Virus record (IMG/VR): IMGVR_UViG_3300046660_000716
Coordinates: 62,001 to 126,000 of that record
Direction: 5' to 3' (one strand)
Length of the DNA: 64,000 nucleotides
Part shown: positions 5,446 to 46,081 of the stretch, piece after piece
Layout: each line of letters starts with the position of its first letter
Numbering within the stretch: position 1 is the first letter of the stretch
Notes under the pieces: model-generated
What the model saw: the letters and a program-made list of their open reading frames with translations, nothing else
What the model was told of the DNA's origin: nothing
Databases searched by the model: none
Program-made: the position numbers and the translations under genes

Positions 5446-5453
5446 CATATCAT
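5446..5453 (+). promoter_or_regulatory. CATATCAT motif, putative early phage promoter
   Basis: Intergenic copy of a motif recurring before gene blocks. Confidence 0.6.
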
Positions 5454-5505
5454 GTGGTCGACAGGAGGGAACTCTCCCTCCGCTCAACCACACAAGGAGA
5501 TACAC

Positions 5506-5952
5506 ATGAAATCGAAACTCGCAGCAGCCCTCGCCATGGCGGCCTCGATGGTCGCCTGCCACAACGTCCAGGCCGCCAGCATGGAGGTCATCAAGAACTT
5601 CGACCAGTTCCTGGGCGCGGTGCACCGCAGCAAGGTGCAGGGCGAGTACACCGACAAGCGCATCAACTACGATGCGTTCGTCAGCCGCGTCGGCACCATG
5701 ATGGCCAACGACCACAAGTCGACCATCTACTTCGCCGAGCTCGGCCCGGTCCGCACCGGCGACCACGTGTCGCCCGGCCTGAGCAACATGACCTGCGTCC
5801 TGCGCAAGCAGGATTACGATCGCGTGCACAACGGCAACCGCATCGCATTCAACGGCGTCATCAAGCAGGTGACCGTCGATCCGCGCTGGAACGGCACGGT
5901 CGGCATGCGCGTGGACGAGCACACCGTCATCGCCGTCTGCGAGGTGGAGTGA
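5506..5952 (+). CDS. exported protein, possible OB-fold (tRNA_anti-like)
   Basis: Signal peptide MKSKLAAALAMAASMVAC; strand pattern ..MTCVL..GNRIAFNGVIK. Confidence 0.65.
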   Translation: MKSKLAAALAMAASMVACHNVQAASMEVIKNFDQFLGAVHRSKVQGEYTDKRINYDAFVSRVGTMMANDHKSTIYFAELGPVRTGDHVSPGLSNMTCVLRKQDYDRVHNGNRIAFNGVIKQVTVDPRWNGTVGMRVDEHTVIAVCEVE

Positions 5953-6398
5953 TGCGAATGGTGTACATCAAGTACGATGCGGAAAACGTGCGGAGGGACC
6001 TGGAAGCGTTGGGCGTGCAGCCCTACCGCTTCGTGGACACCAAGGGCTTCGGTCCTTCCGCCGAGCTGGTCGAACAGGCCGCCGCACTCAACAAAGAGCT
6101 GCTGTCCAACGATTACCTGGTCCATCCCGTCTTCCACGATGACGAGTGGATGGGAGAGTGGAAGTTCGCGCTGGTCGACCTGGGGCTCCAGACCGGGCCG
6201 CTGCCGGCGCGAGTCCTGACCGAGTTCATCGTGCCGAAGCACGCCGACTGGCACACGCTGTACCTCTTCGGCGAGGCCTGCCGCACGACCTGGCACCAGG
6301 CCAAGCTGGTGGGCAAAGCCGTGATGCTGGCTGGCCAGCTGCGCCAGACTTGCTCGCAGACTGGCGTGCCGGTTGAGCTCATCGTGGCGCACTTATGA
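5952..6398 (+). CDS. hypothetical protein
   Basis: TGATG coupling; 148 aa. Confidence 0.75.
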   Translation: MRMVYIKYDAENVRRDLEALGVQPYRFVDTKGFGPSAELVEQAAALNKELLSNDYLVHPVFHDDEWMGEWKFALVDLGLQTGPLPARVLTEFIVPKHADWHTLYLFGEACRTTWHQAKLVGKAVMLAGQLRQTCSQTGVPVELIVAHL

Positions 6399-6592
6399 TA
6401 GAGCCGCGCGAGATAGCCGGGCGACAGAATGCCCGCCACGTCGGCGACTGGATCTGCCAGGGCGTCACAGACGACTTCGGTACCCTGACCGGCATCTTCG
6501 AGCTGCCGCCGGGCGCCTACGCTGCACGCTACAGCTGGTTCTGGGACACGGACTACGAGTTCGAGTTCTTCGGCGCCGGACCCCGCCGCTAG
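6395..6592 (+). CDS. hypothetical protein
   Basis: ATGA overlap; followed by a terminator. Confidence 0.65.
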   Translation: MIEPREIAGRQNARHVGDWICQGVTDDFGTLTGIFELPPGAYAARYSWFWDTDYEFEFFGAGPRR

Positions 6593-6598
6593 GGGAGG

Positions 6599-6628
6599 AA
6601 GAGGGGTCGCCGGACCCCCTCTTTTTTT
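6599..6628 (+). terminator. intrinsic terminator
   Basis: AAGAGGGGTC / GACCCCCTCTT stem plus T7. Confidence 0.8.
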
Positions 6629-6651
6629 CAGCACAAAGACAGCGAAGAATC

Positions 6652-6659
6652 CATATTAT
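6652..6659 (+). promoter_or_regulatory. CATATTAT variant of the early motif
   Basis: Lies just after a terminator and before SD/ATG 6693. Confidence 0.55.
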
Positions 6660-6692
6660 ACCAATGCTATAGCAATTCCAAGAGAGGAAACC

Positions 6693-7061
6693 ATGGAAAC
6701 ATTTCACTTCACGCGCTTGAACGAGTTTCACTTCAAGCGTCTGCTGGACTACGTGCGCGGTCAGAAGTTCCCGATCCGGTTCAAGACGTCCCGGGACGGC
6801 GTGCTGCACTTCACGGCGCACTTGGACCCAGCCTACGAACTTGACTTCCAGCTGACTGCTGCCGACGTCATGAGCGAAGCAGCCATTGGCGCCCTCGGCA
6901 TCACGAGCTACCTGGAGAAGATATCGTCCAACATGTGCAGGGCCGTCGAGGCGGCGTTCTGCATGCGCGAGATGTTTGACGAAAACGGCGTGGTCACCGA
7001 GCTCGGTAAGAACTTCCCGGATCTGATCAAGTCCACCATCGAGTATATCGATGGAAATTAG
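6693..7061 (+). CDS. hypothetical protein
   Basis: SD GAGGA; 122 aa. Confidence 0.75.
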   Translation: METFHFTRLNEFHFKRLLDYVRGQKFPIRFKTSRDGVLHFTAHLDPAYELDFQLTAADVMSEAAIGALGITSYLEKISSNMCRAVEAAFCMREMFDENGVVTELGKNFPDLIKSTIEYIDGN

Positions 7062-7958: not shown

Positions 7959-9074
7959 ATGAGCACACCGACACCCGCGTTCAAGGACGTCCCGACCCAG
8001 GCCAGCGGGCGCTGGGAGGTCGCCACGACCGGCATCTTCACGCACGAGCGCGCCCTGTGGGTGATGAGCGGCGGCGGTTACATCCAGCCGGCCATCACCG
8101 TGGCCACGCTCGGCGACGGGAGCGTCTTCCGCGTGGCAGTGCTGGAGGGCGGCGCTTGGTCTGGCGACGTCTGGACCGACTACGAGCCTGTGGGCGGCTA
8201 CAGCTACATGCCGCGCCAGTTGGACGACATGCGCGCATCGGCGTGGCTGCTGGCCTACGTCAACCACAAGATGCACGAGTACGACCACCCGCGCATGGGG
8301 CAGGCGAAGAAGGGACGGATGGACCGCCTGCTGTTCGACGTTGATGCCGCGCTGGAGAAGGTCGTCCGCGCGCTGGAGTACAAGGACCTGCGCACGCTGA
8401 TGGAGATGTACATCCCGTCGAACGCCCGGTCCGAGAGCGCCAGGAACCTCATGGGCTACGCCCTGAAGATCGGCGCGATTCCGGCCGACAGCGCCTACCG
8501 CGCCCATGCGATCATGCGTCAGCGCGAGGACGAAAATGGCGGCGAGGAGTTCTTCTTCACCGCCCTCCACCACCGCGACACCGCCCTCAGCAAGGGCGAG
8601 CGCTACCTGGACGGCTGGTTCGTGCCGGACGTCCTGCAACAGTCACCAACCGAGCAAGGAAAGAGCATCATGTCAATCGTACACATGGACGTCAAGTCCG
8701 ACGGCCCCGTGGCCCTCCTGAAGGCGCTGGACCTCGCCATGCTCTTCGATGGCCACTTCACCCACACGCGTGCGGGCAAGAACGAAGAGGGCTACGGCAC
8801 GATGGACTTCATCCGCCACTACGGAAGCCAAGCCCTGCCTCCCGAGTACACCCCTCTGCCGTTCAGCATGGACAAGAACCCGGCCGCGGTGGCCGACTTC
8901 GTGAGCGCGTGGCTGAAGAACGGCGACGTCTACCCCCGCCCCAACAACCGCGGCGACGGCTCCCTCAACCGCGGATGGCGGGTCCAGGTCCGCAGCGGCC
9001 TCGACGTCACGTTCGGGATGGACCCCACCCCGGCGATCCGCGTGACCACGTACTTCAACTACTACGGGAAGTGA
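7959..9074 (+). CDS. hypothetical protein, probably two fused units (internal start near 8670)
   Basis: 371 aa; internal A/C-rich leader with AAGGA before MSIVH. Confidence 0.75.
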   Translation: MSTPTPAFKDVPTQASGRWEVATTGIFTHERALWVMSGGGYIQPAITVATLGDGSVFRVAVLEGGAWSGDVWTDYEPVGGYSYMPRQLDDMRASAWLLAYVNHKMHEYDHPRMGQAKKGRMDRLLFDVDAALEKVVRALEYKDLRTLMEMYIPSNARSESARNLMGYALKIGAIPADSAYRAHAIMRQREDENGGEEFFFTALHHRDTALSKGERYLDGWFVPDVLQQSPTEQGKSIMSIVHMDVKSDGPVALLKALDLAMLFDGHFTHTRAGKNEEGYGTMDFIRHYGSQALPPEYTPLPFSMDKNPAAVADFVSAWLKNGDVYPRPNNRGDGSLNRGWRVQVRSGLDVTFGMDPTPAIRVTTYFNYYGK

Positions 9075-9445
9075 CCGTGAAGCTCATCAATCTGAGCCTG
9101 CATGTGCGGGACAACGGCCCGTGGAAGCGGCAAGCGGGCGGCGCGGCGTGGTCCGGCATGGAGTACCATCGCCAGCATATCATGGATGCGGTGAAGGCGC
9201 TGCACTCCTGCGGCGCCACGCTGATCCACATCCCGCTCGACCCGCTCTCGCTCGACCAGTCGAACGACGCGTTCGTGATGCACCGCTTCTTCGGCGACGA
9301 CCACCGCGTCTCTCCCGTCGTGCGCCGCCTGGCCGTCATCCCGGACGGGTCCGCGCGCATCGAGTGGTGGCAGGCGAACTCCAGCCGGCTGGTCTGCACC
9401 GACCAATTCACGCTCCCAGAAACCGAACCAGAAAGAACCGCATGA
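9071..9445 (+). CDS. hypothetical protein
   Basis: GTGA overlap; coupled to gyrA by ATGA. Confidence 0.65.
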   Translation: MTVKLINLSLHVRDNGPWKRQAGGAAWSGMEYHRQHIMDAVKALHSCGATLIHIPLDPLSLDQSNDAFVMHRFFGDDHRVSPVVRRLAVIPDGSARIEWWQANSSRLVCTDQFTLPETEPERTA

Positions 9446-11955
9446 CCAACATGGCAGACAGCAGCATCATCGACGGCGAACTGGAGGACATGTTCCGCCT
9501 CAAGTACACCGCCTTCGCCAAGTCCAGCAACGGCCGCGCCATCCCGGACGCGCGCGACGGCCAGAAGCCCGTGCACCGCCGCGTGCTCTTCCAGACCCTT
9601 CAGACCGCTCCGCCGAGCCGCGGCACCGTCAAGTGCGCCTCCATCGTGGGCAACGCGCTGGGGAACTACCACCCGCACGGCGACACGTCGGTGTACGACG
9701 CGATGTGCCGGATGGTGCGCCCCTACGCCAACAACGTCACCATGATCGTCGGCCAGGGCAACTTCGGCGCCATCGACGGCTCGTCCGCGGCCGCCATGCG
9801 CTACACCGAGGCCAAGCTGGACCCGCTGGCCAACTGGCTGATGATGGACGGCGTGGACGAGGGCGCGGTCCCGATGGCGCCGAACTACGACGGCCGCCTC
9901 ACGGAGCCGACGCTGCTGCCCGTGAAGATGCCCATGCTGCTCCTGAACGGCGTGCCTGCCGGCTCGATTGGGGTCGGCTTTGCCTCCGTCATCCCCTCCC
10001 ACAACGCGGCCGAGCTCGCGACCGCCTCGAAGTACGTGCTGCAGTGCATGGCGGCCGGCGTGGAGCCGCTGCTGGCGGACATCCTGACCGCGATGCCAGG
10101 CCCGGACTTCCCGACCGGCGGCACGGTGAGCTCCGCCGAGGAGATCGCCCGCATGTACGAGACGGGCCGCGGCCTGCTCAAGATCCGCGCCACCGCGAAG
10201 TGCGAGGACGGCGAGGGCCGCTCCGGCGGCCGCATCGTGATCACCTCCATCCCCTACGCCCAGAACACCACGTCACTGGTCGAGGAGATCATGGACGCCA
10301 AGCTGGGCAAGAAGCTGGCCGCCGGCAAGGGCCGCGCGGAGCCCCTGGTCCCGGAGGTCAAGGACGTCCGCGACGAGACCACCACAGACCGCGTGACCAA
10401 GCAGGTCAAGGTGCGCATGGTCATCGAGGTCAAGGCCGGCGAGGACCCGCGCGTGACGCTGGAGAAGCTCTACATCAACACGTCGCTGGAGACCACCTTC
10501 GCCGCCAACATGGTCGCGCTGGACGAGGAGGGCCAGCCGATCATGCTGACGCTCGTCGAGGCCATCACGCGCTGGGCCAACTTCCGCGCCGAGTGCGTGC
10601 GCCGCCAGGCCGCCGCCGACCTGGAGCGCGCCCGCGACCGGGAGCACGTCATCAACGGCCTCGTGGCCGCCATCCCGAAGATCGAGGACGTCATCTCCGT
10701 GGTCAAGGGGTCGGAGTCCGAGGAGGTCGCCAACTACCAGCTGCGCGTTCTCATTCCCTGCACCAGCAAGCAGGCGACCGCCATCCTGGCCATGCGCATC
10801 AGCCGCCTCACCGGCCTGCGCACCGAGGAGCTGGAGGCCGAGCGCGTCGAGCTGCACAACCGGGCGAACGACCTGATCGTGCTGCTGACATCCCAGGAGG
10901 CCGTCATCGCCCACATCGAGCGCGAGCTCGACGAGGCGTCAGCGAAGCTCGCCCGCCCGCGCCGCACGGTCATCGCCGAGTTCAGCGCCACGGGCGACCC
11001 GCGCGACCTGGTGGTCCCCGAGCACTGCCTGGTGCAGGTCACCGGCCGCGGCTACCTCAAGCGGTCGCAGGCCGACGAGTTCCGCACCCAGCTGCGCGGT
11101 GGCAAGGGCAACAAGAAGGCCACCGTCAAGGTCAAGGACGAGGACGTGCTGCAGTCGGTCGTCGGCTGCCACTCGCACGACCGCCTCTTCGCCGTGACGG
11201 ACGGGGGCGCGGTCGTGCGGCTTGAGGCCCACGAGGTGCCGGTCGTCAGCGCCGGCCGCCACGCCGCCAACCTCGGCTTCGAAGAGGGCGAGCTGGTCCG
11301 GGCGCTGCTGGTCAGCCCGTGGCCGGTGCCGGAGGAGGCGCAGGCCGTCTTCGCTACCACCGACGGCGAGGTCAAGCGCGTCGCCATGCCGGACCTGTCC
11401 AGCAAGATGACAAAGCGTCTGGTCTTCTTCCGCTCCGCGACGGAGAGCAACATCCGCGGCGGCATCGAGCTGCCGACCGGCGAGACCTCCGGCGACGTGT
11501 TCCTCGCGTCGGCGCACGGCCAGGGCACGCGCTTCGCCCCGAGCGAGGTCCGCCTGTCCAAGCGCGACAGCGGCGGGGTCCGCGGCATGGACCTCCGCGA
11601 GGACGACCGCCTGGTCTCCATCGGCCGCATCGACTCGGAGGACCAGCTGATCCTCTGCGTCACCAGCGACGGCATCGGCAAGCGCACCGCGTCGTCCGCG
11701 TTCCCCACCCAGGGCCGCGGCAACAAGGGCCGCATCCTGATCCGCCCGCGCCCCGGCGCCGAGCTGGTCCAGGCGCTGGTGGTCCGCGACGCCGACAGCG
11801 TGCTGATCGCGACGAAGGACGGCGTGACCGTCCGGATCCGCGTAGGCGAGGTCAAGGAGCTCGGCCGCTCAGCGATGGGCGTCAAGCTGATCGCCCTGAA
11901 CAAGGGCGACGTCGTCGTGTCCGCGGCGATCCTGCCGCTGGACGACGAGGAGTAA
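9442..11955 (+). CDS. gyrA: DNA gyrase subunit A
   Basis: RAIPDARDGQKPVHRR, YHPHGDTSVYD, GQGNFG, catalytic AAMRYTE, GPDFPTGG, GyrA-box QLRGGKG and beta-pinwheel blades. True start is ATG 9442. Confidence 0.95.
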   Translation: MTNMADSSIIDGELEDMFRLKYTAFAKSSNGRAIPDARDGQKPVHRRVLFQTLQTAPPSRGTVKCASIVGNALGNYHPHGDTSVYDAMCRMVRPYANNVTMIVGQGNFGAIDGSSAAAMRYTEAKLDPLANWLMMDGVDEGAVPMAPNYDGRLTEPTLLPVKMPMLLLNGVPAGSIGVGFASVIPSHNAAELATASKYVLQCMAAGVEPLLADILTAMPGPDFPTGGTVSSAEEIARMYETGRGLLKIRATAKCEDGEGRSGGRIVITSIPYAQNTTSLVEEIMDAKLGKKLAAGKGRAEPLVPEVKDVRDETTTDRVTKQVKVRMVIEVKAGEDPRVTLEKLYINTSLETTFAANMVALDEEGQPIMLTLVEAITRWANFRAECVRRQAAADLERARDREHVINGLVAAIPKIEDVISVVKGSESEEVANYQLRVLIPCTSKQATAILAMRISRLTGLRTEELEAERVELHNRANDLIVLLTSQEAVIAHIERELDEASAKLARPRRTVIAEFSATGDPRDLVVPEHCLVQVTGRGYLKRSQADEFRTQLRGGKGNKKATVKVKDEDVLQSVVGCHSHDRLFAVTDGGAVVRLEAHEVPVVSAGRHAANLGFEEGELVRALLVSPWPVPEEAQAVFATTDGEVKRVAMPDLSSKMTKRLVFFRSATESNIRGGIELPTGETSGDVFLASAHGQGTRFAPSEVRLSKRDSGGVRGMDLREDDRLVSIGRIDSEDQLILCVTSDGIGKRTASSAFPTQGRGNKGRILIRPRPGAELVQALVVRDADSVLIATKDGVTVRIRVGEVKELGRSAMGVKLIALNKGDVVVSAAILPLDDEE

Positions 11956-15840: not shown

Positions 15841-15843
15841 ACG

Positions 15844-15871
15844 GATGCGGCCGAGCGCCGCATCTTTTTTT
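15844..15871 (+). terminator. intrinsic terminator
   Basis: GATGCGGC-cgagc-GCCGCATC plus T7. Confidence 0.85.
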
Positions 15872-16381: not shown

Positions 16382-16698
16382 CCGGTCTGCCAGAAGCCAT
16401 GTTCCCCACCAGCGGTCCGACCGTCATCTCCGAGCACATCGATGACTACGTCAAGGGCATGCGCCATGAGGACGGTCGCGTCGAGATCTTCATCAAGTCG
16501 GACTTGGTGATCGCATTTCCGACCCAGGAAGCAGCCCTCGCCAAGCTCAACGAGATGGCGCCGGACATGAAAAACCGCGGCCACTTCATCCGCGTCGTCG
16601 GCCGCCGCACCATGCGGTCCTACGACGTGAAATCTATGGTCCGGGTGCTCCGCAAGATCCTGAAGCCCATCAAGCCACCGAAAGCGAAGAAAGCATGA
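16378..16698 (+). CDS. hypothetical basic protein
   Basis: GTGA overlap. Confidence 0.65.
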   Translation: MTGLPEAMFPTSGPTVISEHIDDYVKGMRHEDGRVEIFIKSDLVIAFPTQEAALAKLNEMAPDMKNRGHFIRVVGRRTMRSYDVKSMVRVLRKILKPIKPPKAKKA

Positions 16699-17234
16699 AG
16701 AAGATGAACCAAGAGAAGGGTCCGGCCTACGTGGACTTCAGCCGCGAGACCATGTACCCCGTCGTGCGCGCCGTGCTTGCGGCCACGCGGTTCTCCGGCC
16801 ACATCTACAACCTGGAGCGCGTAGACCATCCGGTAACGTCCGACGCGCTCTGCGCCGAGGCGGTCCGCGTGCTCAAGGCGGCAGGATACACCGACCGCGT
16901 GTACAACTGCATCACGCCGCGCATGACGCTGCAGCGCGAGGGCTTCCCGTGGGAGTACGCGGAAGTGGAGGTCGACCTGCGCAAGTTCGCCCACGGCGAC
17001 GACGCCTGCCAGCATGAGTACATCCGCCTGTACTGGGAGGAGGGCGGCGGCGCGATGGACAGCGGCACGCCGCACACGTATATCATGTGCATGCGCTGTG
17101 CCAAGAGCCCGGTCCTGCCGAGCATCGGCACACGCCGCAAGCCCGGCGCCGGGCTGACCGTGGAGCGCGTGCCAGCTCCGCCCAGCCTCTGGCGTCGCGT
17201 CCTGCAGTTCCTGAACCCCTGCGACAAAACGTAA
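16695..17234 (+). CDS. hypothetical protein (CQH..CMRC motif)
   Basis: ATGA overlap; 179 aa. Confidence 0.75.
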   Translation: MKKMNQEKGPAYVDFSRETMYPVVRAVLAATRFSGHIYNLERVDHPVTSDALCAEAVRVLKAAGYTDRVYNCITPRMTLQREGFPWEYAEVEVDLRKFAHGDDACQHEYIRLYWEEGGGAMDSGTPHTYIMCMRCAKSPVLPSIGTRRKPGAGLTVERVPAPPSLWRRVLQFLNPCDKT

Positions 17235-21649: not shown

Positions 21650-22816
21650 ATGGAAGGACTGGAAAAGATAGGATTCGAGGTGGGCTGGGATCACGCCGAG
21701 TACGGCCTGTCCCTGCCTGCCGACTTCTCCGGGCCGGGCGTGATGCTTGACGGTTACAAGGCCGGCATCCTCAGACTGGGCCAGGCCAGGCCCAAGGAGC
21801 ACGACATCTTCACCAAGAAGTGGCTGCAGCTGCGCCGGTCGGCGTGGCGCCGCGGCCGCATCTTCGAGGAGGCGGTGACCCCGCGCTTCCTGGTGCAGAT
21901 CGCGCAGGACAACTGCCCGATCTGCCGGTTCGAGATGACCTCCGGGACGGGCGAGGACACGGACTGGTCCGTCGACCGCCTCAACAACGACGGCGGCTAC
22001 GCCCGGGGAAACCTGGTCGTGATGAGCGTCAGGGCCAACAAGGCCAAGGCAGCGCTCACGGTCGAGGAGATCGTGAAGCGCTCCACCGAGTTCAGCGAGG
22101 AGCACCAGGCGATGGTCCTCGACAGCACGCCCCTGTACGGTCTGACCGTGCAGGAGACGATGCGGCTCTACACCCTGACCGTGCTCACGTCCGTCGAGCA
22201 CATGGTCATCCCCTCGGTCGTGATGGTGCCCCCTCACGTGCCGACGGGCGTGCCGTACATCCTGCAGTGCTACCTCGCCCGCCTGTCGGTGATCGCCGTG
22301 TTCTCGGCGAAGCTGATGAGGGAGCTCAAGGCGCTCGACGGCCGCCCGAACGGTATCTGGCGCGTCGTCCGCCTCATGATGGAGCGCGCCAAGCCGCGCA
22401 TCGCCGACCACCCGAACAGCGCCAGCTGGTTCGACTGGGGCGCGCGGGAGTACGTCATCGGAGGCCAGGACGTCGACTGGCTGGCCGAGGACATCTGGCT
22501 CTACAACGCGGACGTGTACAAGGCGTTCCACAAGTGGGCGCTTAACGCCCCTCCGAAGGTGTTCGAGTACGTGACCCGCTCCGTGTTCGACCTCGCCGCC
22601 CGCCAGGGGTGCGGCACCTCCTTCAACCGCACCACGAACGTGGACCGCGAGGCGCTGGGCCACCGCATCGGCCTGGACACGCGCGGGTTCGTCGACGCGC
22701 ACGACCGCCGGGCCTCCCCGCGCCCGGACTCCGAGGACCGGCGCGCGCCGATCGAAATGCCTCCCGGCACGGATATCATTCCCGTGCAACCAACCGAAGG
22801 AGTAAGCACCGCATGA
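21650..22816 (+). CDS. His-Me finger (HNH-like) nuclease-domain protein
   Basis: CPIC..WSVDRLNNDGGYARGNLVVMSVRANKAK, a bba-Me pattern. Confidence 0.65.
   Translation: MEGLEKIGFEVGWDHAEYGLSLPADFSGPGVMLDGYKAGILRLGQARPKEHDIFTKKWLQLRRSAWRRGRIFEEAVTPRFLVQIAQDNCPICRFEMTSGTGEDTDWSVDRLNNDGGYARGNLVVMSVRANKAKAALTVEEIVKRSTEFSEEHQAMVLDSTPLYGLTVQETMRLYTLTVLTSVEHMVIPSVVMVPPHVPTGVPYILQCYLARLSVIAVFSAKLMRELKALDGRPNGIWRVVRLMMERAKPRIADHPNSASWFDWGAREYVIGGQDVDWLAEDIWLYNADVYKAFHKWALNAPPKVFEYVTRSVFDLAARQGCGTSFNRTTNVDREALGHRIGLDTRGFVDAHDRRASPRPDSEDRRAPIEMPPGTDIIPVQPTEGVSTA
22772..22779 (+). promoter_or_regulatory. GATATCAT motif
   Basis: At the 3' end of the upstream CDS, 34 nt before ATG 22813. Confidence 0.5.
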
Positions 22817-23459: not shown

Positions 23460-23471
23460 AACATCCACTTA
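23460..23471 (+). promoter_or_regulatory. AACA-N6-TA, putative non-virion RNAP promoter
   Basis: AACAtccactTA between a terminator and the sigma-like gene; matches the AR9 late consensus. Confidence 0.5.
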
Positions 23472-24987: not shown

Positions 24988-24995
24988 CATATCAT
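24988..24995 (+). promoter_or_regulatory. CATATCAT motif
   Basis: Intergenic, before SD AAGGAG / ATG 25033. Confidence 0.65.
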
Positions 24996-25032
24996 TCTCC
25001 TGTCCAAGCCGGACTACTAAGGAGAATTCGAT

Positions 25033-26089: not shown

Positions 26090-26097
26090 AATATCAT
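26090..26097 (+). promoter_or_regulatory. AATATCAT motif
   Basis: Intergenic, before SD AAGGAG / ATG 26130. Confidence 0.6.
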
Positions 26098-26129
26098 ACT
26101 TTCGCAAGACCAACAACCAAGGAGCAGCA

Positions 26130-27697: not shown

Positions 27698-27794
27698 GTT
27701 CGGCACCTGCCGCGAGGCGTGCAAGGCGCTGAGCGAGGTTCCCGAGGGGAAGGAGGCGCGCCTCTACGCGACGCTGGGAGAGGCCCATGGCTAA
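27579..27794 (+). CDS. hypothetical protein
   Basis: 71 aa; overlaps the DUF4326 tail; 8-nt overlap with the next gene. Confidence 0.5.
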   Translation: MNVCGEQCRRAGLATPSNAVGTEVQFFDPTTGWTATPKTKFGTCREACKALSEVPEGKEARLYATLGEAHG

Positions 27795-28530
27795 GCTGAC
27801 ACCCGACAAGCGCGCCCGGATCGAGAAGCTGGTGGTCTCGGCCTTCGCCGCCCTCGACGAAACGGGCGCGAACGCGGCCAAGTACGAGAAGGAGCTCAAG
27901 GGAATGAGCGACGCCCAGTTCACGAGGTGGCTGGACGAGTTCGTTCGCAACGAGGACAAGCACTTCTACCTGGACGTGCAGCCCTTCCACAACGAACCGA
28001 CGCTGGAGCAGATCGAGAAGGCTGCCAAGATCACCGGCACGAAGCTCCACCAGTACGTCTACTTCAAGCACGACGGCGCCCAGGGCGACCCGGTGCGCAC
28101 CGCGAAGCGCCTGCCCTGCGGCTACATCCACGTCCGCCGCCTGCAGCAGATCCTGGCCAAGAAGACGTCCTACTCGACCGAGGCCAGCAAGCGCAGCCAG
28201 CTGACAGGCCAGCTCTCAGGCGACGACGCCGTTGGCCGCCTGGCCGACGAAGAGGCGTACGCCCTCAAGACCGTCGGCGCCAACGCCATCCTGCGCGAGC
28301 TCCTGGGTCCGCGCGCCGACAACCGGGGCAAGCGCCTCGGCATGTACCACGCGATCGAGCGCGACGGCTACGTGCAGTACAAGGACCTCGTGGGCGACAC
28401 GAAGGACCAGCCGACGCTGAACTACCTCAACACGCTGCTCCTGGCGGCCGGGCTCAAGTCCGACCTCGTCGACTCGACCGAGCTGCTGCGCGTGAGCGTC
28501 GATCGCCCCATCGAAAACCAAAGGAAATGA
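27787..28530 (+). CDS. virion RNA polymerase beta C-terminal subunit (SPN3US gp244-like)
   Basis: GYIHVRRLQQILAKK..LTGQ..GRLADEEAYAL..GANAILRELLGPRAD corresponds to the RpoB C-terminus. The N-terminus YEKELKGMSDAQF and the size of about 245 aa match the small vRNAP beta-C subunit. Confidence 0.8.
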   Translation: MAKLTPDKRARIEKLVVSAFAALDETGANAAKYEKELKGMSDAQFTRWLDEFVRNEDKHFYLDVQPFHNEPTLEQIEKAAKITGTKLHQYVYFKHDGAQGDPVRTAKRLPCGYIHVRRLQQILAKKTSYSTEASKRSQLTGQLSGDDAVGRLADEEAYALKTVGANAILRELLGPRADNRGKRLGMYHAIERDGYVQYKDLVGDTKDQPTLNYLNTLLLAAGLKSDLVDSTELLRVSVDRPIENQRK

Positions 28531-28531: not shown

Positions 28532-29086
28532 ATGATCATCGAAGACATGGGCCTCATGGAGGCCCTCGAGATGCCGTACGCACCGATCAAGATCTGCGCC
28601 GCCGGTCTGACCGGCACCTCCGGCACCTACGCGCGCGCCGACCCGATCTACGACGACGTGGCCGCCGTCCTGGCCGCGATGCCGGCCGCGTGCCCGTTCG
28701 ACGCGAAGACGCTGCGCGAGGAGGCACACGTGACCATCGTGTACTCCCGCGAGCACGCCGCCGACATGTCGCTCATCGACAAGTCCGCGTTCGACCTGCG
28801 CTGCATCGAAGCCAAGATCACCGGCATCGAGCACTGGGACGGCCACGACGGCGACGGGTACGTCGTACTGAAGCTGGCGAGCGAGTCGCTGGCGGCCTGG
28901 AACCGCTACCTGATCGACGCGGGCGCCCAGCATAGCTTCCCGGACTACTCGCCACACCTGAGCCTCTGCTCCAAGGCCGGCCCGAAGACGCCGGAGATGG
29001 TGAGCTGGATGGAGTCGGCGTGCGAGAAGCTGGTGGGCATGTGCCTGTGCTTCGACGCCATCATCATCGAAGACATCAAGAAGTAG
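28532..29086 (+). CDS. acb1: anti-CBASS nuclease Acb1-like 2H phosphoesterase (T4 gp57B family)
   Basis: GTYA, HVTIVYSR and GAQHSFPDYSPHLSL, versus recalled T4 GLYV, HSTICYSR and GATHDFDDYTPHITL. Confidence 0.85.
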   Translation: MIIEDMGLMEALEMPYAPIKICAAGLTGTSGTYARADPIYDDVAAVLAAMPAACPFDAKTLREEAHVTIVYSREHAADMSLIDKSAFDLRCIEAKITGIEHWDGHDGDGYVVLKLASESLAAWNRYLIDAGAQHSFPDYSPHLSLCSKAGPKTPEMVSWMESACEKLVGMCLCFDAIIIEDIKK

Positions 29087-29464: not shown

Positions 29465-29472
29465 CATATCAT
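29465..29472 (+). promoter_or_regulatory. CATATCAT motif
   Basis: Intergenic. Confidence 0.6.
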
Positions 29473-29542
29473 GCGTTTGAACCAACAGAGACCATGCGCC
29501 CAAAGGCGCATGGTCCTCTTTCCAACCTTTCAGGAGCCGACC

Positions 29543-30177: not shown

Positions 30178-30185
30178 CATATCAT
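30178..30185 (+). promoter_or_regulatory. CATATCAT motif
   Basis: Intergenic. Confidence 0.65.
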
Positions 30186-30238
30186 ACTCTCGAACCGATA
30201 GCCGTACTACCTCAACCCCACAAGAAAGGTACCACACC

Positions 30239-33236: not shown

Positions 33237-33244
33237 GATATAAT
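33237..33244 (+). promoter_or_regulatory. GATATAAT variant of the early motif
   Basis: After a terminator and before the recA-like gene; contains TATAAT. Confidence 0.6.
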
Positions 33245-33289
33245 TGTATCGTACGACCACCGATTCACCCATTCACAAGGAAGCACACA

Positions 33290-34676: not shown

Positions 34677-36761
34677 ATGGCAGGATCAGTAATCAAGGAC
34701 GCAGCACAGTTCGACGGCGGGCACAAGTTCCTCGCGGAGGAGCTGCTGCAGCCGATGTCGGACAAGTGCGACGTCGGCCGCACCAACATGTGGGCCGGCC
34801 ACTTCGTCCAGGCCGTGACGCTGGACCACCCGGAGCGCCCGCGCATCTTCAGTCGCTTCGAGGACGCCATCGGTGCGTACACCACCGCCGTGAAGGTGCT
34901 GCCGGCCGACGCCGAGATCGTGGCCGTGTTCCAGAAGAACGCCCTGCAGAGCGTGTACGCGATCCGCTACGCAGACGGGAAGATGGACGTGCACTTCGCC
35001 AAGCCGGTGCGCCACCTGACCGAGAACTACGGCTACACCCTGAGCAGCCACCTGGAGGGCCGCCAGGCCGGCGAGAAGCTCCCGTCCGGCTCCGTCATCC
35101 AGAGCTGGGCCTGCACGAACGAGGAGGGCAGCTTCCAGTTCGGCCAGAACCTGCGCACCGTGTACATGAACAAGGACGGCAAGACCTACGAGGACGGCTA
35201 CATCATCGGCGAGTCCGCGGCCGACAACATGTCGCACACCTCGGTCGAGGAAGTCACGGTCGTGCTCAACGCCAACGACCTGCTCGTCAACCACTACAGC
35301 GGGAACGAGGAGCACCAGGGCTTCCCGAACGTGGGCGAGAAGATCAAGAACGGCCTCATGTCCGTCCGCCGCCGGATCAACCACGAGTCGATCCTGTTCG
35401 ACCTGGCGGCGCAGCAGCTGGGCAAGATCCACTGGGACGCCGACCAGCCGTTCTACGTCGACGGCACGGTGGTGGACATCGACGTCTACTCGAACCTGTC
35501 GGCCGAGGAGCTGGACAAGCACCCGTTCAACAGCCAGATCCTGCAGTACCACAACAAGTGGCTGGAGTTCCGCGACTGGTTCACCGAGGTCTTCAGCGAG
35601 GTCACCCAGTCCGAGGGTCCGCGCATGTACTCCGACGACGTGGCCTACTGGTGGCGCCTGTGCCGCGACACCCGCACGGAGCGGTGGCGCCACGAGCGCC
35701 GCGAGTTCGACGGCGTGGTCATCCGCTTCACGGTGGCAAAGCGCAACCCGGTCAAGGCGGGCTCGAAGCTCACCAACCGCTTCGGCGGCAAGGGCGTCGT
35801 CTCGGAGGTCCGCCCGGACCACCTGATGCCGAAGACCAAGGACGGCGTCTACGCGCAGCTGATCGTCAACAGCCTGGGCGTGGTTAACCGCCTCAACCCG
35901 GCCCAGCTGTACGAGTCCGAGGTGAACTACATCGGAGAGTGCGTGGAAGCCCAGATGCGCGCGATGCCCGGCGTCGAGGCGGCCGCGACCCACTTCCTGA
36001 AGTTCCACTCGTTCGTCGACCCCGTGCACGGTGCGTTCCTGGCCGAGCAGCCCGAGCTGTACGATCTCGTGGGCGAGATCCTGCGCGGCGAGGAGCACAT
36101 CTACATCCACCAGCCGCCCTTCTTCGGCAACATCTCGCTGGATACGCTCGAGCTCACCTACAAGGAGTTCGGCGTCGAGAAGGTGTACTACGAGGGCCTG
36201 GAGGAGCCGCAGATCCCGGGCACCAACTACTACCTGAAGCTGCGCCACGAGCCGCTGTCGAAGATGTCCGCCCGCTCGGCCAAGCACCTGTCGATCAGCG
36301 GCGTCCCGACCAAGAACAGCCGGGGCGTGCGCGGCAGCACGGAGCACCACAGCACGACGCCTATCCGCCTGGGCGAGCAGGAGCTCCAGAACTTGCTGAT
36401 AGCCAACCAGCCGGACGAGCTGAAGCGCCTGCTGCGCCTGTACGCCACCGACGACCTGTCCCGCGAAGGGGCGATCGCCGAGCTGCTGGTGCGCCAGGAC
36501 GCGTTCTCGCACGAGCGCATCGAGCCGCGCGGCACGGGCATCACCCGCCCCGTCGCCGGCCTGAAGGCGCTGCTCGAGTCCATCGGGCTCAAGCTCCAGA
36601 CCACCGGCGAGATCGTGGACGAGTCCCTGGACGACGTCCCCCTGCCTACCACCTACGCCACATTGGAGATCGAAAATGAGCATGAAGAAACCGCAGCCAC
36701 CGAGGCCGCAATTGCCGTCGAAGAGCTCGACCCAGTCGACCCAGACGCCGAAGACGAGTGA
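34677..36761 (+). CDS. non-virion RNA polymerase beta C-terminal subunit (AR9 gp089 / phiKZ gp71-73-like)
   Basis: TYEDG, GSKLTNRFGGKGVVS, IVNSLGVVNRLNPAQLYE, YYLKLRHEP.SKMSARS, IRLGEQE. Confidence 0.9.
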   Translation: MAGSVIKDAAQFDGGHKFLAEELLQPMSDKCDVGRTNMWAGHFVQAVTLDHPERPRIFSRFEDAIGAYTTAVKVLPADAEIVAVFQKNALQSVYAIRYADGKMDVHFAKPVRHLTENYGYTLSSHLEGRQAGEKLPSGSVIQSWACTNEEGSFQFGQNLRTVYMNKDGKTYEDGYIIGESAADNMSHTSVEEVTVVLNANDLLVNHYSGNEEHQGFPNVGEKIKNGLMSVRRRINHESILFDLAAQQLGKIHWDADQPFYVDGTVVDIDVYSNLSAEELDKHPFNSQILQYHNKWLEFRDWFTEVFSEVTQSEGPRMYSDDVAYWWRLCRDTRTERWRHERREFDGVVIRFTVAKRNPVKAGSKLTNRFGGKGVVSEVRPDHLMPKTKDGVYAQLIVNSLGVVNRLNPAQLYESEVNYIGECVEAQMRAMPGVEAAATHFLKFHSFVDPVHGAFLAEQPELYDLVGEILRGEEHIYIHQPPFFGNISLDTLELTYKEFGVEKVYYEGLEEPQIPGTNYYLKLRHEPLSKMSARSAKHLSISGVPTKNSRGVRGSTEHHSTTPIRLGEQELQNLLIANQPDELKRLLRLYATDDLSREGAIAELLVRQDAFSHERIEPRGTGITRPVAGLKALLESIGLKLQTTGEIVDESLDDVPLPTTYATLEIENEHEETAATEAAIAVEELDPVDPDAEDE

Positions 36762-37410: not shown

Positions 37411-37418
37411 GATATCAT
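37411..37418 (+). promoter_or_regulatory. GATATCAT motif
   Basis: Intergenic, directly followed by a hairpin. Confidence 0.55.
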
Positions 37419-37423
37419 TGACA

Positions 37424-37468
37424 TGGACGGATGAGCCCTTTGGCTCATCCGCCATTCCTTTACTTTTT
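37424..37468 (+). terminator. hairpin with a T-rich tail
   Basis: CGGATGAGCC-cttt-GGCTCATCCG then TTCCTTTACTTTTT. Confidence 0.6.
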
Positions 37469-37483: not shown

Positions 37484-37798
37484 ATGTCGATCGACAAGAA
37501 ATTCGATACGTTCGCAGAGACGCAGACCAAGGGGCCGCGCCTGCGCGGAGCCACCCGTGCGGTGATGATGGCCGTGCCGCCGCCCGGCCACACCTCGCCC
37601 ATCGAGGCCACGGTCCTGGAGGGCACCCCGGACCAGGCGTTCGCCGCCCTGCGCCACAAGTGCTTCAACCGCGGCGCAGTCGAGATCGTCAAGAGCATCG
37701 TGCACATGAGCTCCACGCCGAACAGCCTGGCCAACTTCGCGGTCATCATGGAGAGCGATGCCCGCATCCAGCTGTCCTTCATGAAGGCCGCCGCGTGA
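37484..37798 (+). CDS. hypothetical protein
   Basis: SD GAAGGA. Confidence 0.7.
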   Translation: MSIDKKFDTFAETQTKGPRLRGATRAVMMAVPPPGHTSPIEATVLEGTPDQAFAALRHKCFNRGAVEIVKSIVHMSSTPNSLANFAVIMESDARIQLSFMKAAA

Positions 37799-43894: not shown

Positions 43895-43914
43895 GCGCCA
43901 TGCAGTGAGGAGGC

Positions 43915-43946
43915 CCATCCCCGCGGGGATGGGCTTTCGTTTTTTG
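43915..43946 (+). terminator. intrinsic terminator
   Basis: 22-bp palindrome GCCCATCCCCGCGGGGATGGGC plus TTTCGTTTTTT. Confidence 0.8.
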
Positions 43947-43958
43947 CAGGAGGTAGAG

Positions 43959-44603
43959 ATGTACGCACTTCCAGAATTCGACAACCCGCGCAACTGGTCG
44001 GAAGACTACGCGGCGAACGGCAGCGGCATGTACACCAACACGTGCTGCGATTGCAAGGTCCCGTTCTTCGGACACAAGCGTCGCTTCATCTGCAAGGTGT
44101 GCGACAAACAGAAAACCGACGCCGCGGCGGCGCTGCAGAAGCAGATCGCCGACGGCGCACTCACGGAAGAAGAGATGAGCATACTGCCAAAGATTTCCCT
44201 GATCGACGGGCTGACCGCGCACCTCGCGGCGTCCCTCCAGATCGACACCGCCAACCAGGAAGAGATGGCCGGCGTCGAGAAGATCGCCCAGTCGGCGGTC
44301 GAGTACTTCCAGTACAGCACGAAGGGCGCCCCCAACGGGTCCGGCGCCGTCATGCAGTGGATCCTGTTCTCCGCGGCGTGGGAGGGCAAGGTGGCCCAGG
44401 CCGAGATCGACGCGTTCTTCTCCAACGTGAACATGGACCCGACGCGCATGCTCGCCGCGTGGCGCTCGATGAGCCCGCAGGAGCGCCAGGGTGTGTTCAC
44501 GGTCGCCCTGATCCCGGGCAAGCTGGACGAAGCTGACATCAGCGACGTCGCCGCCGCCCTCTTCCACAACCGCGGCGCCGCGACCGGCGGCCTCCCGGGC
44601 TAG
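43959..44603 (+). CDS. hypothetical protein with an N-terminal zinc ribbon
   Basis: CCDC..F.GHKRRF.C..C; SD AGGAGGT. Confidence 0.75.
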   Translation: MYALPEFDNPRNWSEDYAANGSGMYTNTCCDCKVPFFGHKRRFICKVCDKQKTDAAAALQKQIADGALTEEEMSILPKISLIDGLTAHLAASLQIDTANQEEMAGVEKIAQSAVEYFQYSTKGAPNGSGAVMQWILFSAAWEGKVAQAEIDAFFSNVNMDPTRMLAAWRSMSPQERQGVFTVALIPGKLDEADISDVAAALFHNRGAATGGLPG

Positions 44604-44656
44604 CGCTCGCGGGCCGGGCAACAGCCAATCGCAGACAACACCAATCAGGAGAACCA

Positions 44657-45292
44657 ATGAAGCAAGACCAAATCACATCCCTGCCGCAGATCACGGTGAC
44701 GGACAAGTTCGACGTGCCGGACGTGCGCGCCGTGCTGCTGGCCGAGTTTGGCCCGGACGTGGGCGTGCGCGAGATCGTCGCCGCCGAGGCCGATCCGGCC
44801 GCCAATGAAGCGGAAGCGGCACCCGCGACCGCGCTGGAAGAGTACGACGCGGTGCTCGAAGCCGCAGCCGGACTGGAGGAGTTCCCCGAGACCGTCCCGG
44901 TGGCGCAGATGTCGGGCGTGCGCCTCGTGCGCGTGCTGGACTCCAAGGTCGACGGCGCGGGCAACGTGTTGCACGACCTCGTCACGGCGTTCGACGCCGG
45001 TACCGGCATGACCCCGCTGACCTTCCTGCTGGGCGGAGGCGCCGTCCTGGCCTCGACCCGCCCAGGCGAGACCTACGCCTGGCAGCTGGTCAAGGTCGGG
45101 CAGATCCCGGACGAGTCCGCGACCGCCGTGCAGATCGAGGGCTGCCGCCTGGCGACCGCCGAGGAGACGGTCACGCTGAACGAGATGTACCCGGGCTGGC
45201 TGGAGGCATGCAAGAAGGTGGACGAGGCCGCCAAGGGCGACGACTTCACCGAGACGCTGCTGAAGGCGCCGCGCATCGGCATGATGCACTAG
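44657..45292 (+). CDS. hypothetical acidic protein
   Basis: SD AGGAG. Confidence 0.75.
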   Translation: MKQDQITSLPQITVTDKFDVPDVRAVLLAEFGPDVGVREIVAAEADPAANEAEAAPATALEEYDAVLEAAAGLEEFPETVPVAQMSGVRLVRVLDSKVDGAGNVLHDLVTAFDAGTGMTPLTFLLGGGAVLASTRPGETYAWQLVKVGQIPDESATAVQIEGCRLATAEETVTLNEMYPGWLEACKKVDEAAKGDDFTETLLKAPRIGMMH

Positions 45293-45966
45293 GCGCCGTT
45301 GATGTCGACCACCAGGATCAGGCGGCCGTCCGCCATCACGGCGTAGGGCTGCGGCTCCGCGTCGGGGTAGACCTCCTCCGCCTGGACGTCGGCCCGCTCG
45401 GCGCCGTTCTCGCCGACCACCCACAGGTTCCCCTGCGGGTCCGACACGGTGTCGCCGACGCTGATGTCGGCCGGCAGCTCCCGCTCCTCCTCTTCCTCGT
45501 ACGGCTCCAGGGCCGCCGCGGGGGAGGGGAGGGCCGCGCCCTCGTTTTTTGGCTCGTCGCCGCCCACGGGGTCGAGCATGGCCGCGGCCGGGGCGGTCCC
45601 GCCCTTGAGCATGGTCTGGATCGACTGCAGCAGGCTGGCGTTCACGCCGGACGCGCGCTCGTCGTTCTTGGCCGCGTCGTCCTGCTGGGCGATCTTGATC
45701 TCGCGGTCGGCCATGTCCTTCTTGGTCGCCTTGAGCTCCTTGATCAGCGCCAGGCGCTGGTTGCGGTTCGAGATCACCTGCTCCGTCGTTCGCACGACGA
45801 GGGCGGCGGCCCCGCGCGCGCGGTCCATCGTGGGGTACAGCTTGTCCAGAAGCTCGTTCAGGCGCTTGTCGAGGGCCTCGCACTCTCGGATCGCCTCCAG
45901 AATGCGCTTGGTCTCGGCCTGGTAGGACGCGCGGAACTTCTTGTCTGAGTAGTCGGCGATAGCCAT
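45289..45966 (-). CDS. hypothetical coiled-coil protein
   Basis: 225 aa; heptad N-terminal half and acidic tail; genome-typical codon bias on the minus strand. Confidence 0.75.
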   Translation of the reverse strand: MAIADYSDKKFRASYQAETKRILEAIRECEALDKRLNELLDKLYPTMDRARGAAALVVRTTEQVISNRNQRLALIKELKATKKDMADREIKIAQQDDAAKNDERASGVNASLLQSIQTMLKGGTAPAAAMLDPVGGDEPKNEGAALPSPAAALEPYEEEEERELPADISVGDTVSDPQGNLWVVGENGAERADVQAEEVYPDAEPQPYAVMADGRLILVVDINGA

Positions 45967-46039
45967 GATTGTGTCCAGTGAGGGCGCCGGCCATGGTGCG
46001 ACAACGGGTCGCGGGCTGCGGGCGCTTGGGTGCTTCGGT

Positions 46040-46051
46040 CAACTTGATGTT
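46040..46051 (-). promoter_or_regulatory. AACA-N6-TG, putative late promoter
   Basis: AACAtcaagtTG upstream of the minus-strand gene, divergent from CATATCAT. Confidence 0.45.
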
Positions 46052-46073
46052 CCGCCAACGCGGAGGCCGCACG

Positions 46074-46081
46074 CATATCAT
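46074..46081 (+). promoter_or_regulatory. CATATCAT motif
   Basis: Intergenic, heads the HNH-polB unit. Confidence 0.6.

What the first reader, a model, noticed from the sequence alone, without database searches (positions are those of the whole stretch)
5446..46081. Recurrent NATATCAT motif heading gene blocks: candidate virion-RNAP (early) promoter
Seen: CATATCAT at 5446, 15899, 24988, 29465, 30178 and 46074; GATATCAT at 22772 and 37411; AATATCAT at 26090; CATATTAT at 6652; GATATAAT at 33237. All are on the plus strand, roughly 30-80 nt before a start, and several directly follow terminators. I could see no consistent -35 TTGACA. An AT-rich 7-8-mer recurring in short gaps of a GC-rich genome is unlikely by chance. 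Established (recalled): phiKZ early promoters have a TATATTAC-like core. Inference: this is this phage's early promoter.
Basis: partly seen in the sequence, partly recalled or inferred. Interest (0 to 1): 0.6.

Follow-up and report, generated by a model that had tools for sequence, protein, structure and literature searches.

The report
Early promoters of a jumbo phage
The recurring ATATCAT-type motif is real and is most likely the early promoter read by the RNA polymerase this giant phage carries in its particle, matching the promoter known from Bacillus phage AR9, so it is a solid but expected feature.

Summary
Observation confirmed. All 11 listed sites exist. The full pattern ATAT[C/A/T]AT-N6-G occurs 13 times in the window, all on the + strand, against 0.4 expected.

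The window lies in a complete 259-kb, 65.6% GC jumbo phage. This phage encodes two split multisubunit RNA polymerases, and their closest characterised relatives are in Bacillus phage AR9/PBS1 and Yersinia phiR1-37.

The motif matches the experimentally mapped AR9 virion-RNAP early promoter, AAATATATATTAT-(6N)-G+1:
- same ATATNAT core;
- same 6-nt spacer;
- same G (30 of 31 intergenic sites).

Gene context fits an early promoter:
- It precedes all five non-virion RNAP subunit genes, replication genes and small ORFan genes.
- It does not directly precede virion or virion-RNAP genes.
- Those genes instead carry an AR9-type late motif, AACA-N6-T[A/G] (41 against 6.5 expected).

Six metagenomic relatives (41-69% GC) keep the motif: 26 copies on the gene strand against 1 on the other, including the orthologous site upstream of the UvsX/nvRNAP-beta operon.

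The phage has no consistent -35 element, no sigma factor and no T7-like RNAP.

This is a new member of a known kind. Start sites and rifampicin resistance remain untested.

The parts
5447..5460 (+). Early promoter: ATATCAT (5447-5453), 6N, predicted +1 G at 5460. It lies 46 nt upstream of a 148-aa ORFan gene (5506-5952).
   Evidence: no PHROG or Pfam family for the gene
6653..6666 (+). Early promoter, ATATTAT variant (identical to the AR9 core), predicted +1 G at 6666. It follows the terminator hairpin 6603-6618 plus T-run. Next gene is at 6693.
9177..9190 (+). Full motif inside a 124-aa ORF (9071-9445), 252 nt upstream of the gyrase/topoisomerase A-subunit homolog (9442-11955).
   Evidence: AR9 gyrA (g044) also has an early promoter (PMC5312081)
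15900..15913 (+). Early promoter ATATCAT-N6-G. It follows the terminator 15843-15865 plus T-run. Next gene is at 15941. It has a weak -35-like TTGAGC at 17 nt.
17080..17093 (+). Full motif inside ORF 16695-17234, 154 nt upstream of the next gene (17247).
22773..22786 (+). Early promoter ATATCAT-N6-G, overlapping the 3' end of the upstream ORF. Next gene is at 22813.
24989..25002 (+). Early promoter ATATCAT-N6-G. Next gene is at 25033 (ORFan).
26091..26104 (+). Early promoter ATATCAT-N6-G. Next gene is at 26130 (ORFan, 308 aa).
29466..29479 (+). Early promoter ATATCAT-N6-G. The 5' UTR holds a 12-bp hairpin (29489-29516). Next small gene is at 29543.
30179..30192 (+). Early promoter ATATCAT-N6-G. 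Next gene is at 30239 (ORFan, 236 aa).
33238..33251 (+). Early promoter, ATATAAT(T) variant, heading the UvsX-like gene (33290-34606) and the nvRNAP beta C-terminal subunit gene. The orthologous site is conserved in six relatives.
37412..37425 (+). Early promoter ATATCAT-N6-G. A hairpin at 37428-37451 starts right after the predicted +1. Next gene is at 37484.
46075..46088 (+). Early promoter ATATCAT-N6-G, heading a 69-aa gene (46123). The DNA polymerase exonuclease-domain subunit homolog (46964-48814, AR9 g132-like) is the next homolog downstream.
   Evidence: AR9 g132 also has an early promoter
34677..36761 (+). Gene for the non-virion RNAP beta-subunit C-terminal half, homolog of AR9 gp089 (32% identity, E 3e-103). 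It must be transcribed before nvRNAP exists.
27787..28530 (+). Homolog of part of AR9 g078, which is annotated as a virion RNAP subunit / HD-domain protein (43% identity over 134 aa).
23460..23471 (+). AR9-type late-promoter candidate AACA-N6-TA, 22 nt upstream of gene 23493 (AR9 g052 homolog). Similar intergenic candidates lie at 51817-51828 (+) and 46040-46051 (-).

Best explanation
The motif is the early promoter of an uncultivated, high-GC, AR9/phiR1-37-like jumbo phage. The consensus is R-N5-ATAT(C>A>T)AT-N4-Y-Y-G. With the G as the inferred start (+1), ATATNAT occupies -13 to -7 and the purine sits at -19. Inferred mechanism: a multisubunit virion RNA polymerase is packaged in the particle and injected with the DNA. 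Its subunits are homologs of AR9 g145, g189, g264 and part of g078. It recognises the short AT-rich element centred near -10 without a -35 element or a sigma factor, and starts at the G 7 nt past the last T. These transcripts encode small host-takeover ORFans, replication enzymes and all five subunits of the second (non-virion) polymerase. That second enzyme, with its gp226-like specificity subunit, then reads AACA-N6-T(A/G) late promoters in front of virion genes and virion-RNAP genes. Shown here: the motif, its enrichment, orientation, spacing and gene context, its conservation in relatives, and the presence of both polymerase sets. Inferred by homology to AR9: which polymerase reads it, the start site, and the timing.
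For: (1) Statistics. 13 full motifs in the window against 0.40 expected. 29 in oriented upstream gaps against 0.3 in shuffles of those same gaps. G at the 6N position in 30 of 31 intergenic sites (binomial p 8e-14) and in 7 of 8 intragenic ATATCAT copies (p 0.002). (2) Match to AR9. The AR9 early promoter, AAATATATATTAT-(6N)-G+1, was mapped by dRNA-seq and primer extension; transcripts from the early promoters tested (P087, P104) still accumulated under chloramphenicol (PMC5312081). My re-alignment of the 34 annotated AR9 sites shows T at -1 in 25 of 34 sites and G at +1 in 31 of 34. Our purine 6 nt upstream of the core (29 of 31) coincides with AR9's invariant first A. (3) Both polymerase sets are present. 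nvRNAP homologs: beta'N (genome 3006), beta C (window 34677), beta N (150298), beta'C (176568, - strand) and gp226-like (234921). vRNAP homologs: 166061, 185780 (-), 242987 (-) and window 27787. (4) Gene context. All five nvRNAP genes lie behind the motif, as in AR9. Ten orthologous units carry an early promoter in both phages: gyrB, gyrA, the five nvRNAP genes, guanylate kinase, the DNA polymerase exonuclease subunit and the g214-like virion gene. Only the DNA polymerase catalytic subunit disagrees. For virion homologs the nearest upstream promoter is late-type in 15 and early in 2; for non-virion homologs it is 16 and 17 (Fisher p 0.007). (5) The AR9-type late motif AACA-N6-T[AG] occurs 41 times against 6.5 expected, while the N5 and N7 spacing controls are at expectation. 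(6) Relatives with 54-67% identical nvRNAP beta C and 41-69% GC carry 26 full motifs on the gene strand against 1 on the other. The site upstream of the UvsX/beta C operon is ATATNAT in all six, with G after 6N in five, while the flanks differ. (7) The genome has no Sigma70_r2 match, and the T7-type RNAP model also gave no match, though its control rang in no genome. (8) The first genes after the window promoters have no PHROG or Pfam family, which is typical of early genes.
Against: There are no experimental data for this phage: no start sites, no timing, no rifampicin or chloramphenicol test and no virion proteome. No RNA run was listed. TATCAT, TATAAT and TATTAT with a start 7 nt downstream also fit a sigma-70 -10 hexamer, so host RNAP could read some sites, and 3 of the 13 window sites have a weak -35. 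Gene calls are my own codon-usage caller, so 'intergenic' and UTR lengths are approximate. The nvRNAP beta'C gene has a late-type motif directly upstream, and its early motifs are 369 nt upstream (inside the SbcC gene) or at the head of the SbcC gene. Two virion homologs lie behind an early motif, although AR9 shows the same for g214.
Confidence: 0.85

Rival explanations
1. The sites are host sigma-70 promoters of the '-10 only' kind, read by the bacterial RNA polymerase at the start of infection.
For: TATCAT, TATAAT and TATTAT keep the key A-11 and T-7 of the sigma-70 -10 hexamer, and the conserved G lies at the usual +1 distance. Three window sites pass a relaxed two-hexamer scan.
Against: There is no -35 signal above chance, and TG precedes the -10 hexamer at only one of the four scan-passing sites. 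The invariant positions (A-13, T-12, A-11, T-10, A-8, T-7 and G+1, with only -9 free) do not match sigma-70's TAnnnT tolerance. The same architecture in AR9 is read without new protein synthesis and is assigned to the virion polymerase (PMC5312081). The phage carries its own two polymerases.
Confidence: 0.07
2. The motif is a middle or continuous-class promoter read by the non-virion polymerase rather than the virion enzyme.
For: One nvRNAP gene (beta N, genome 150298) has both motif types upstream, as AR9 'continuous' genes do.
Against: All five nvRNAP subunit genes lie behind the motif, so something other than nvRNAP must read it first. A separate, strongly enriched AR9-type AACA-N6-T[AG] motif, together with a gp226 homolog, accounts for nvRNAP.
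Confidence: 0.04
3. The motif is a by-product of AT-rich intergenic composition, or a dispersed repeat, with no function.
For: Intergenic DNA is less GC-rich (59%) than the genome as a whole (65.6%).
Against: Dinucleotide shuffles of the intergenic regions themselves give 0.3 full motifs against 29 observed. The flanks are not similar, so it is not a repeat element. Orientation, spacing to G and conservation at orthologous sites in relatives all argue for function.
Confidence: 0.01

Closest known systems
Bacillus phage AR9 (PBS1-like) early promoters, AAATATATATTAT-(6N)-G+1, assigned to the virion multisubunit RNAP (Lavysh et al. 2017, PMC5312081)
   Same: The ATATNAT core, the 6-nt spacer, G at +1, a pyrimidine at -1 and a purine/A 6 nt upstream of the core are all shared. 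In both phages the motif is placed before the five nvRNAP genes, gyrase, DNA polymerase and guanylate kinase. Both also have a companion AACA-(6N)-T(A/G) late motif.
   Different: Position -9 is mostly C here (22 of 31) and T in AR9. AR9's AT-rich 5' extension (AAATAT) is reduced here to a single purine. This genome is 65.6% GC, against 27.8% for AR9. Protein identities are only 22-45%. The promoter here is unmapped experimentally.
Predicted or mapped vRNAP early promoters of phiKZ-related phages (phiKZ TATATTAC; OBP/N1M2 ...ATATTATYWWADTG; 201phi2-1 ...TATATTACDWHDGTG)
   Same: All have an AT-rich, highly conserved element centred near -10. For OBP, N1M2 and 201phi2-1, ATATTA(T/C) is followed by 6N-G by my reading of the table; for phiKZ only the core is listed there (PMC7058600 Table 2; review PMC7598289).
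   Different: Those phages are nucleus-forming Chimalliviridae. This phage's polymerases are closer to AR9/phiR1-37, with only about 20-22% identity to Pseudomonas jumbo-phage beta subunits. The phiKZ late motif (TATG) differs from the AACA type seen here.
Bacterial sigma-70 -10 element (TATAAT)
   Same: A hexamer of the form TAxxAT sits at -12 to -7, and the start lies 7 nt downstream.
   Different: There is no -35 element, no TGn extension and no sigma factor in the phage. The extra invariant A at -13 and the near-invariant G+1 are not sigma-70 features.

Membership tests
Virion-RNAP early promoters of multisubunit-RNAP jumbo phages (AR9/phiKZ type) | Highly conserved AT-rich element centred near -10, with a conserved start 6 nt after the element | tested here: met
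   ATAT[C/A/T]AT is invariant at 6 of 7 positions. G follows 6N in 30 of 31 intergenic sites. The geometry is identical to the 34 annotated AR9 sites. The G being the actual start is inferred.
Virion-RNAP early promoters of multisubunit-RNAP jumbo phages (AR9/phiKZ type) | The phage encodes both a virion and a non-virion split beta/beta' RNAP | tested here: met
   Homologs of AR9 nvRNAP g270, g089, g105, g154 and g226, and of vRNAP g145, g189, g264 and part of g078.
Virion-RNAP early promoters of multisubunit-RNAP jumbo phages (AR9/phiKZ type) | The motif heads nvRNAP subunit genes and other early genes, not virion genes | tested here: met
   All five nvRNAP genes lie behind the motif (the beta'C gene only via the SbcC unit or an internal site 369 nt upstream). 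Virion homologs have nearest promoter late 15, early 2 (Fisher p 0.007).
Virion-RNAP early promoters of multisubunit-RNAP jumbo phages (AR9/phiKZ type) | Primary transcript 5' ends map to the conserved start early in infection | not testable with these tools
   No RNA run was listed for the stretch. The phage is uncultivated.
Virion-RNAP early promoters of multisubunit-RNAP jumbo phages (AR9/phiKZ type) | Transcription is independent of host RNAP (rifampicin) and of new protein synthesis, and the polymerase is present in virions | not testable with these tools
   This needs infection experiments and virion proteomics.
Bacterial sigma-70 promoters | A -35 hexamer 16-18 nt upstream of the -10, or a TGn extended -10 | tested here: not met
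   Only 3 of 13 window sites pass a relaxed scan, and the count is not above shuffles. Little information is found at -35, and TG precedes the -10 hexamer at only one of the four scan-passing sites.
AR9-type nvRNAP late promoters (AACA-(6N)-T(A/G)); side finding | AACA at -11 to -8, a fixed 6-nt spacer, TA/TG at the start, upstream of virion genes, and a gp226-like subunit present | tested here: met
   41 against 6.5 expected in oriented gaps. N5 and N7 controls give 4 and 5 against about 6 expected. The motif precedes the sheath, terminase, tape-measure and vRNAP beta'N genes among others. A gp226 homolog lies at genome 234921. Dependence on uracil was not tested.

The most novel reading that the evidence does not exclude
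This phage and its metagenomic relatives may form a previously uncharacterised, mostly high-GC branch of the AR9/PBS1/phiR1-37 lineage. The branch would have kept the whole two-polymerase promoter code: ATATNAT-6N-G early and AACA-6N-T(A/G) late. Like its characterised relatives, it might replace thymine by uracil in its DNA. AR9's late-promoter recognition needs template-strand dU. This genome has the gp226 homolog and the AACA motif, lacks ThyA and ThyX, has a homolog of the AR9 g151 deoxyribonucleotidase, and has a 211-aa dUTPase/dCTP-deaminase-fold protein. If so, the early promoter would really be AUAUCAU. A second open point is that the ATATAAT(T) variant marks nvRNAP genes (4 of 6 against 2 of 25), which could define an immediate-early subclass.
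Probability: 0.3. Interest if true: 0.6.

Novelty: new member of a known kind. Interest (0 to 1): 0.4.

Why it matters
The result gives a precise, testable promoter map for an uncultivated 259-kb phage: 36 predicted early starts genome-wide, 13 of them in the window. It shows that the virion-polymerase promoter code (ATATNAT, 6 nt, G) holds across genomes from 28% to 69% GC. In the high-GC genome the code is stripped to its minimal core. That narrows which bases the sigma-less virion polymerase must contact, and how that enzyme recognises promoters was still open in the papers read here (PMC5312081). The paired late motif allows early and late classes to be assigned to genes of unknown function without any culture. 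[quoted passage not shown]

Tried and rejected
- Megablast of 24 kb of the window against GenBank phages found no match.
- The search for related loci with the nvRNAP beta C protein in IMG/VR found no confirmed relative. Relatives were reached instead through the protein word search and contig look-ups.
Conservation therefore rests on six loci of 15-22 kb.
- The search for RNA sequencing runs listed none.
- The sigma-70 reading was rejected for lack of a -35 element, a TGn extension or a phage sigma factor.
- The T7-like RNAP Pfam search was blank, but its control also rang nowhere, so it is weak evidence.
- PHROG and Pfam scans of the first genes behind the window promoters gave no family except UvsX.
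- Counting the short late motif over the whole window is uninformative, because many copies fall in coding sequence. Only the intergenic, oriented count was used.
- The nvRNAP-read and chance explanations were considered and rejected as listed under rivals.

Full report
**Observation**

- ATATCAT alone occurs 11 times in the window against 0.87 expected. None of 100 dinucleotide-preserving shuffles reached 11.
They lie inside ORFs.
The base 6 nt after the last T is G in 30 of 31 intergenic sites genome-wide. The two bases before it are pyrimidines, and the base 6 nt before the core is a purine in 29 of 31.
- The full pattern ATAT[C/A/T]AT-N6-G occurs 13 times in the window, all +, against 0.40 expected.

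**Genomic setting**

The window is bases 62001-126000 of a complete 259,338-bp virus record with direct terminal repeats and 65.6% GC.
- I called 312 genes with a codon-usage model; coding density is 92%.
- ATATCAT is the most enriched 7-mer in oriented upstream gaps, followed by ATATAAT(T).
- Genome-wide, 21 of 29 ATATCAT copies, all 6 ATATAAT and all 3 ATATTAT lie in the 7.8% non-coding DNA. All point at the downstream gene.
- Shuffling the upstream gaps themselves (59% GC) gives 0.3 full motifs against 29 observed. Intergenic AT-richness therefore does not explain the signal.
- Predicted 5' UTRs for the 25 sites under 150 nt have a median of 46 nt.
- Three window sites follow terminator-like hairpins or T-runs.

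**What the phage is**

PHROG scans and tblastn show split multisubunit RNA polymerase genes.
- The window gene 34677-36761 is 32% identical (E 3e-103) to AR9/PBS1 gp089, the non-virion RNAP beta C-terminal subunit. It is 32% identical to the phiR1-37 homolog and only about 20-22% identical to Pseudomonas jumbo-phage subunits.
- A tblastn map of all called proteins against the annotated AR9 genome finds 56 homologs (AR9 annotation).
- All five nvRNAP subunits are among them: AR9 g270, g089, g105, g154 and the specificity subunit g226.
- The virion RNAP subunits are also found: g145, g189, g264 and part of g078.
- The map also includes gyrase, DNA polymerase, ligase, the major capsid protein, portal, sheath, terminase and tape measure.
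- The genome has no Sigma70_r2 match, and a T7-type polymerase model gave no match, though its control rang in no genome.

**Comparison with the known promoter**

AR9 early promoters were mapped by dRNA-seq and primer extension. Transcripts from the early promoters tested (P087, P104) still accumulated under chloramphenicol, and the class is assigned to the injected virion RNAP. Their consensus is AAATATATATTAT-(6N)-G+1 (PMC5312081).
- I re-aligned the 34 promoters annotated in the AR9 record. The last seven bases are ATATTAT, followed by six bases, the last usually T, and then G in 31 of 34.
- The motif here has the same core, differing only at one position: C 22, A 6, T 3. It has the same spacer and the same G.
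- Its upstream purine coincides with AR9's invariant first A.
- Predicted early promoters of OBP, N1M2 and 201phi2-1 also read ATATTA(T/C)-6N-G by my reading of the published table.
- A review states that every RNAP-encoding jumbo phage has such an AT-rich element of about 10 nt centred near -10 (PMC7598289).

**Gene context**

- The motif lies upstream of all five nvRNAP subunit genes. For beta'C it does so through the SbcC unit and an internal copy 369 nt upstream.
- It also precedes gyrB, an internal site before gyrA, UvsX, the DNA polymerase exonuclease-domain unit, guanylate kinase, the primase unit and many small genes without any PHROG or Pfam family.
- Ten orthologous units carry an early promoter in both AR9 and this phage. 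Only the DNA polymerase catalytic subunit disagrees.
- Virion homologs and vRNAP genes are not directly preceded by the motif.

**A second, late-type motif**

Virion genes and vRNAP genes are instead preceded by AACA-N6-T(A/G), which is the AR9 late (nvRNAP/gp226) consensus.
- It occurs 41 times in oriented gaps against 6.5 expected.
- The same words with 5- or 7-nt spacers occur at expectation.
- For homologs of AR9 virion proteins, the nearest upstream promoter is late-type in 15 and early in 2. For other homologs the counts are 16 and 17 (Fisher p 0.007).
- The two exceptions are homologs of AR9 g214 and g215, which lie behind an annotated early promoter in AR9 too.

**Conservation in relatives**

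A protein search found about 30 metagenomic relatives with 53-67% identical beta C subunits. I examined six loci from contigs of 57-253 kb, with 41-69% GC.
- They hold 26 full motifs on the gene strand and 1 on the other.
- The site upstream of the UvsX-like gene that precedes beta C reads ATATAAT-N6-G in four loci and in the window. It reads ATATGAT-N6-G in one locus and ATATTAT-N6-C in another. The flanking sequence differs throughout.
- The fifth core position is therefore free, and the rest is under selection.

**Mechanism and rivals**

The best reading, with confidence 0.85, is as follows.
1. The injected virion polymerase recognises ATATNAT at -13 to -7 and a purine at -19, without a -35 element or a sigma factor, and starts at the G.
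2. This produces the nvRNAP.
3. The nvRNAP then reads the AACA late promoters.

The assignment to the virion enzyme, the start site and the timing are inferred from AR9.

The rivals fare worse.
- A sigma-70 reading (0.07) is weakened by the absence of a -35 or TGn signal. Only 3 of 13 sites pass a relaxed scan, which is not above shuffles. The pattern of invariant bases also does not fit.
- Reading by nvRNAP (0.04) cannot explain its own genes lying behind the motif.
- Chance (0.01) is excluded.
- No RNA run was listed for the stretch, so no reads were laid.

**Verdict**

It is a new member of a known kind, solid but expected.

The less expected points are side findings:
- the full AR9 two-promoter code is retained in a high-GC, uncultivated clade;
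- the ATATAAT(T) variant is preferred in front of nvRNAP genes (4 of 6 against 2 of 25, p 0.006);
- there are hints of uracil-DNA: no ThyA or ThyX, a homolog of the AR9 g151 deoxyribonucleotidase, and a dUTPase/dCTP-deaminase-fold protein.

Noticed in passing
Genome-wide; in the window at 23460-23471 (+), 51817-51828 (+) and 46040-46051 (-): An AR9-type late promoter motif, AACA-N6-T(A/G), is strongly enriched in oriented upstream gaps (41 against 6.5 expected). N5 and N7 spacing controls are at expectation. It sits in front of the sheath, terminase, tape-measure and vRNAP beta'N genes and other virion genes.
   Followed up: yes
Whole genome G000; g214 at genome 163067-163747; dUTPase-fold ORF at genome 239182-239817: Hints of uracil-containing DNA, as in AR9/PBS1/phiR1-37. 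There is no ThyA or ThyX. There is a homolog of the AR9 g151 5'(3')-deoxyribonucleotidase. A 211-aa protein matches the dUTPase/dCTP-deaminase fold only at the Pfam cut-off (22.8 bits). No dCMP deaminase was found. The gp226 homolog and the AACA late motif are conserved. This is not proof.
   Followed up: partly
Genome 2930, 95238 (window 33238), 150229 and 234853, compared with the other early sites: The ATATAAT(T) variant precedes nvRNAP subunit genes in 4 of its 6 copies, against 2 of 25 for the other variants (Fisher p 0.006). The same variant is kept upstream of the UvsX/beta C operon in four relatives. It could mark a stronger or earlier subclass.
   Followed up: partly
Window 9177-9190 and 17080-17093; genome 154711, 178805 (-), 239486 and 259077 (-): Intragenic ATATCAT copies keep the G after 6N in 7 of 8 cases (p 0.002), so several may be internal early promoters. 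One lies 252 nt before gyrA and one 369 nt before nvRNAP beta'C.
   Followed up: partly
Window 37428-37451 and 29489-29516; also about 5463-5490: Stable hairpins begin within a few bases of the predicted +1 of some early transcripts. They may be 5' stabilising or regulatory structures.
   Followed up: no
Window 28532-29086 (+): A 184-aa protein matches Pfam Acb1 (anti-CBASS, 66.6 bits against a cut-off of 27). It lies in the same-strand block of early-promoter units. Relatives carry Acb1 at a similar place.
   Followed up: no
Genome 2927-2936 (outside the window, left end): Two divergent early promoters overlap back to back. ATATCAT on the - strand heads guanylate kinase and ATATAAT on the + strand heads nvRNAP beta'N. 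They share the central ATAT.
   Followed up: no
Window 58039-62892 (-): A 1617-aa protein is built of 7-9 tandem repeat domains that hit PHROG head-decoration, structural and tail-fibre families.
   Followed up: no
L031:7591-9951 and L034 (whole locus): In one relative the UvsX-like gene is 786 aa and carries a LAGLIDADG_3 domain, suggesting an intein or homing endonuclease insertion. Another relative has only 41% GC yet keeps the same promoter motif.
   Followed up: no
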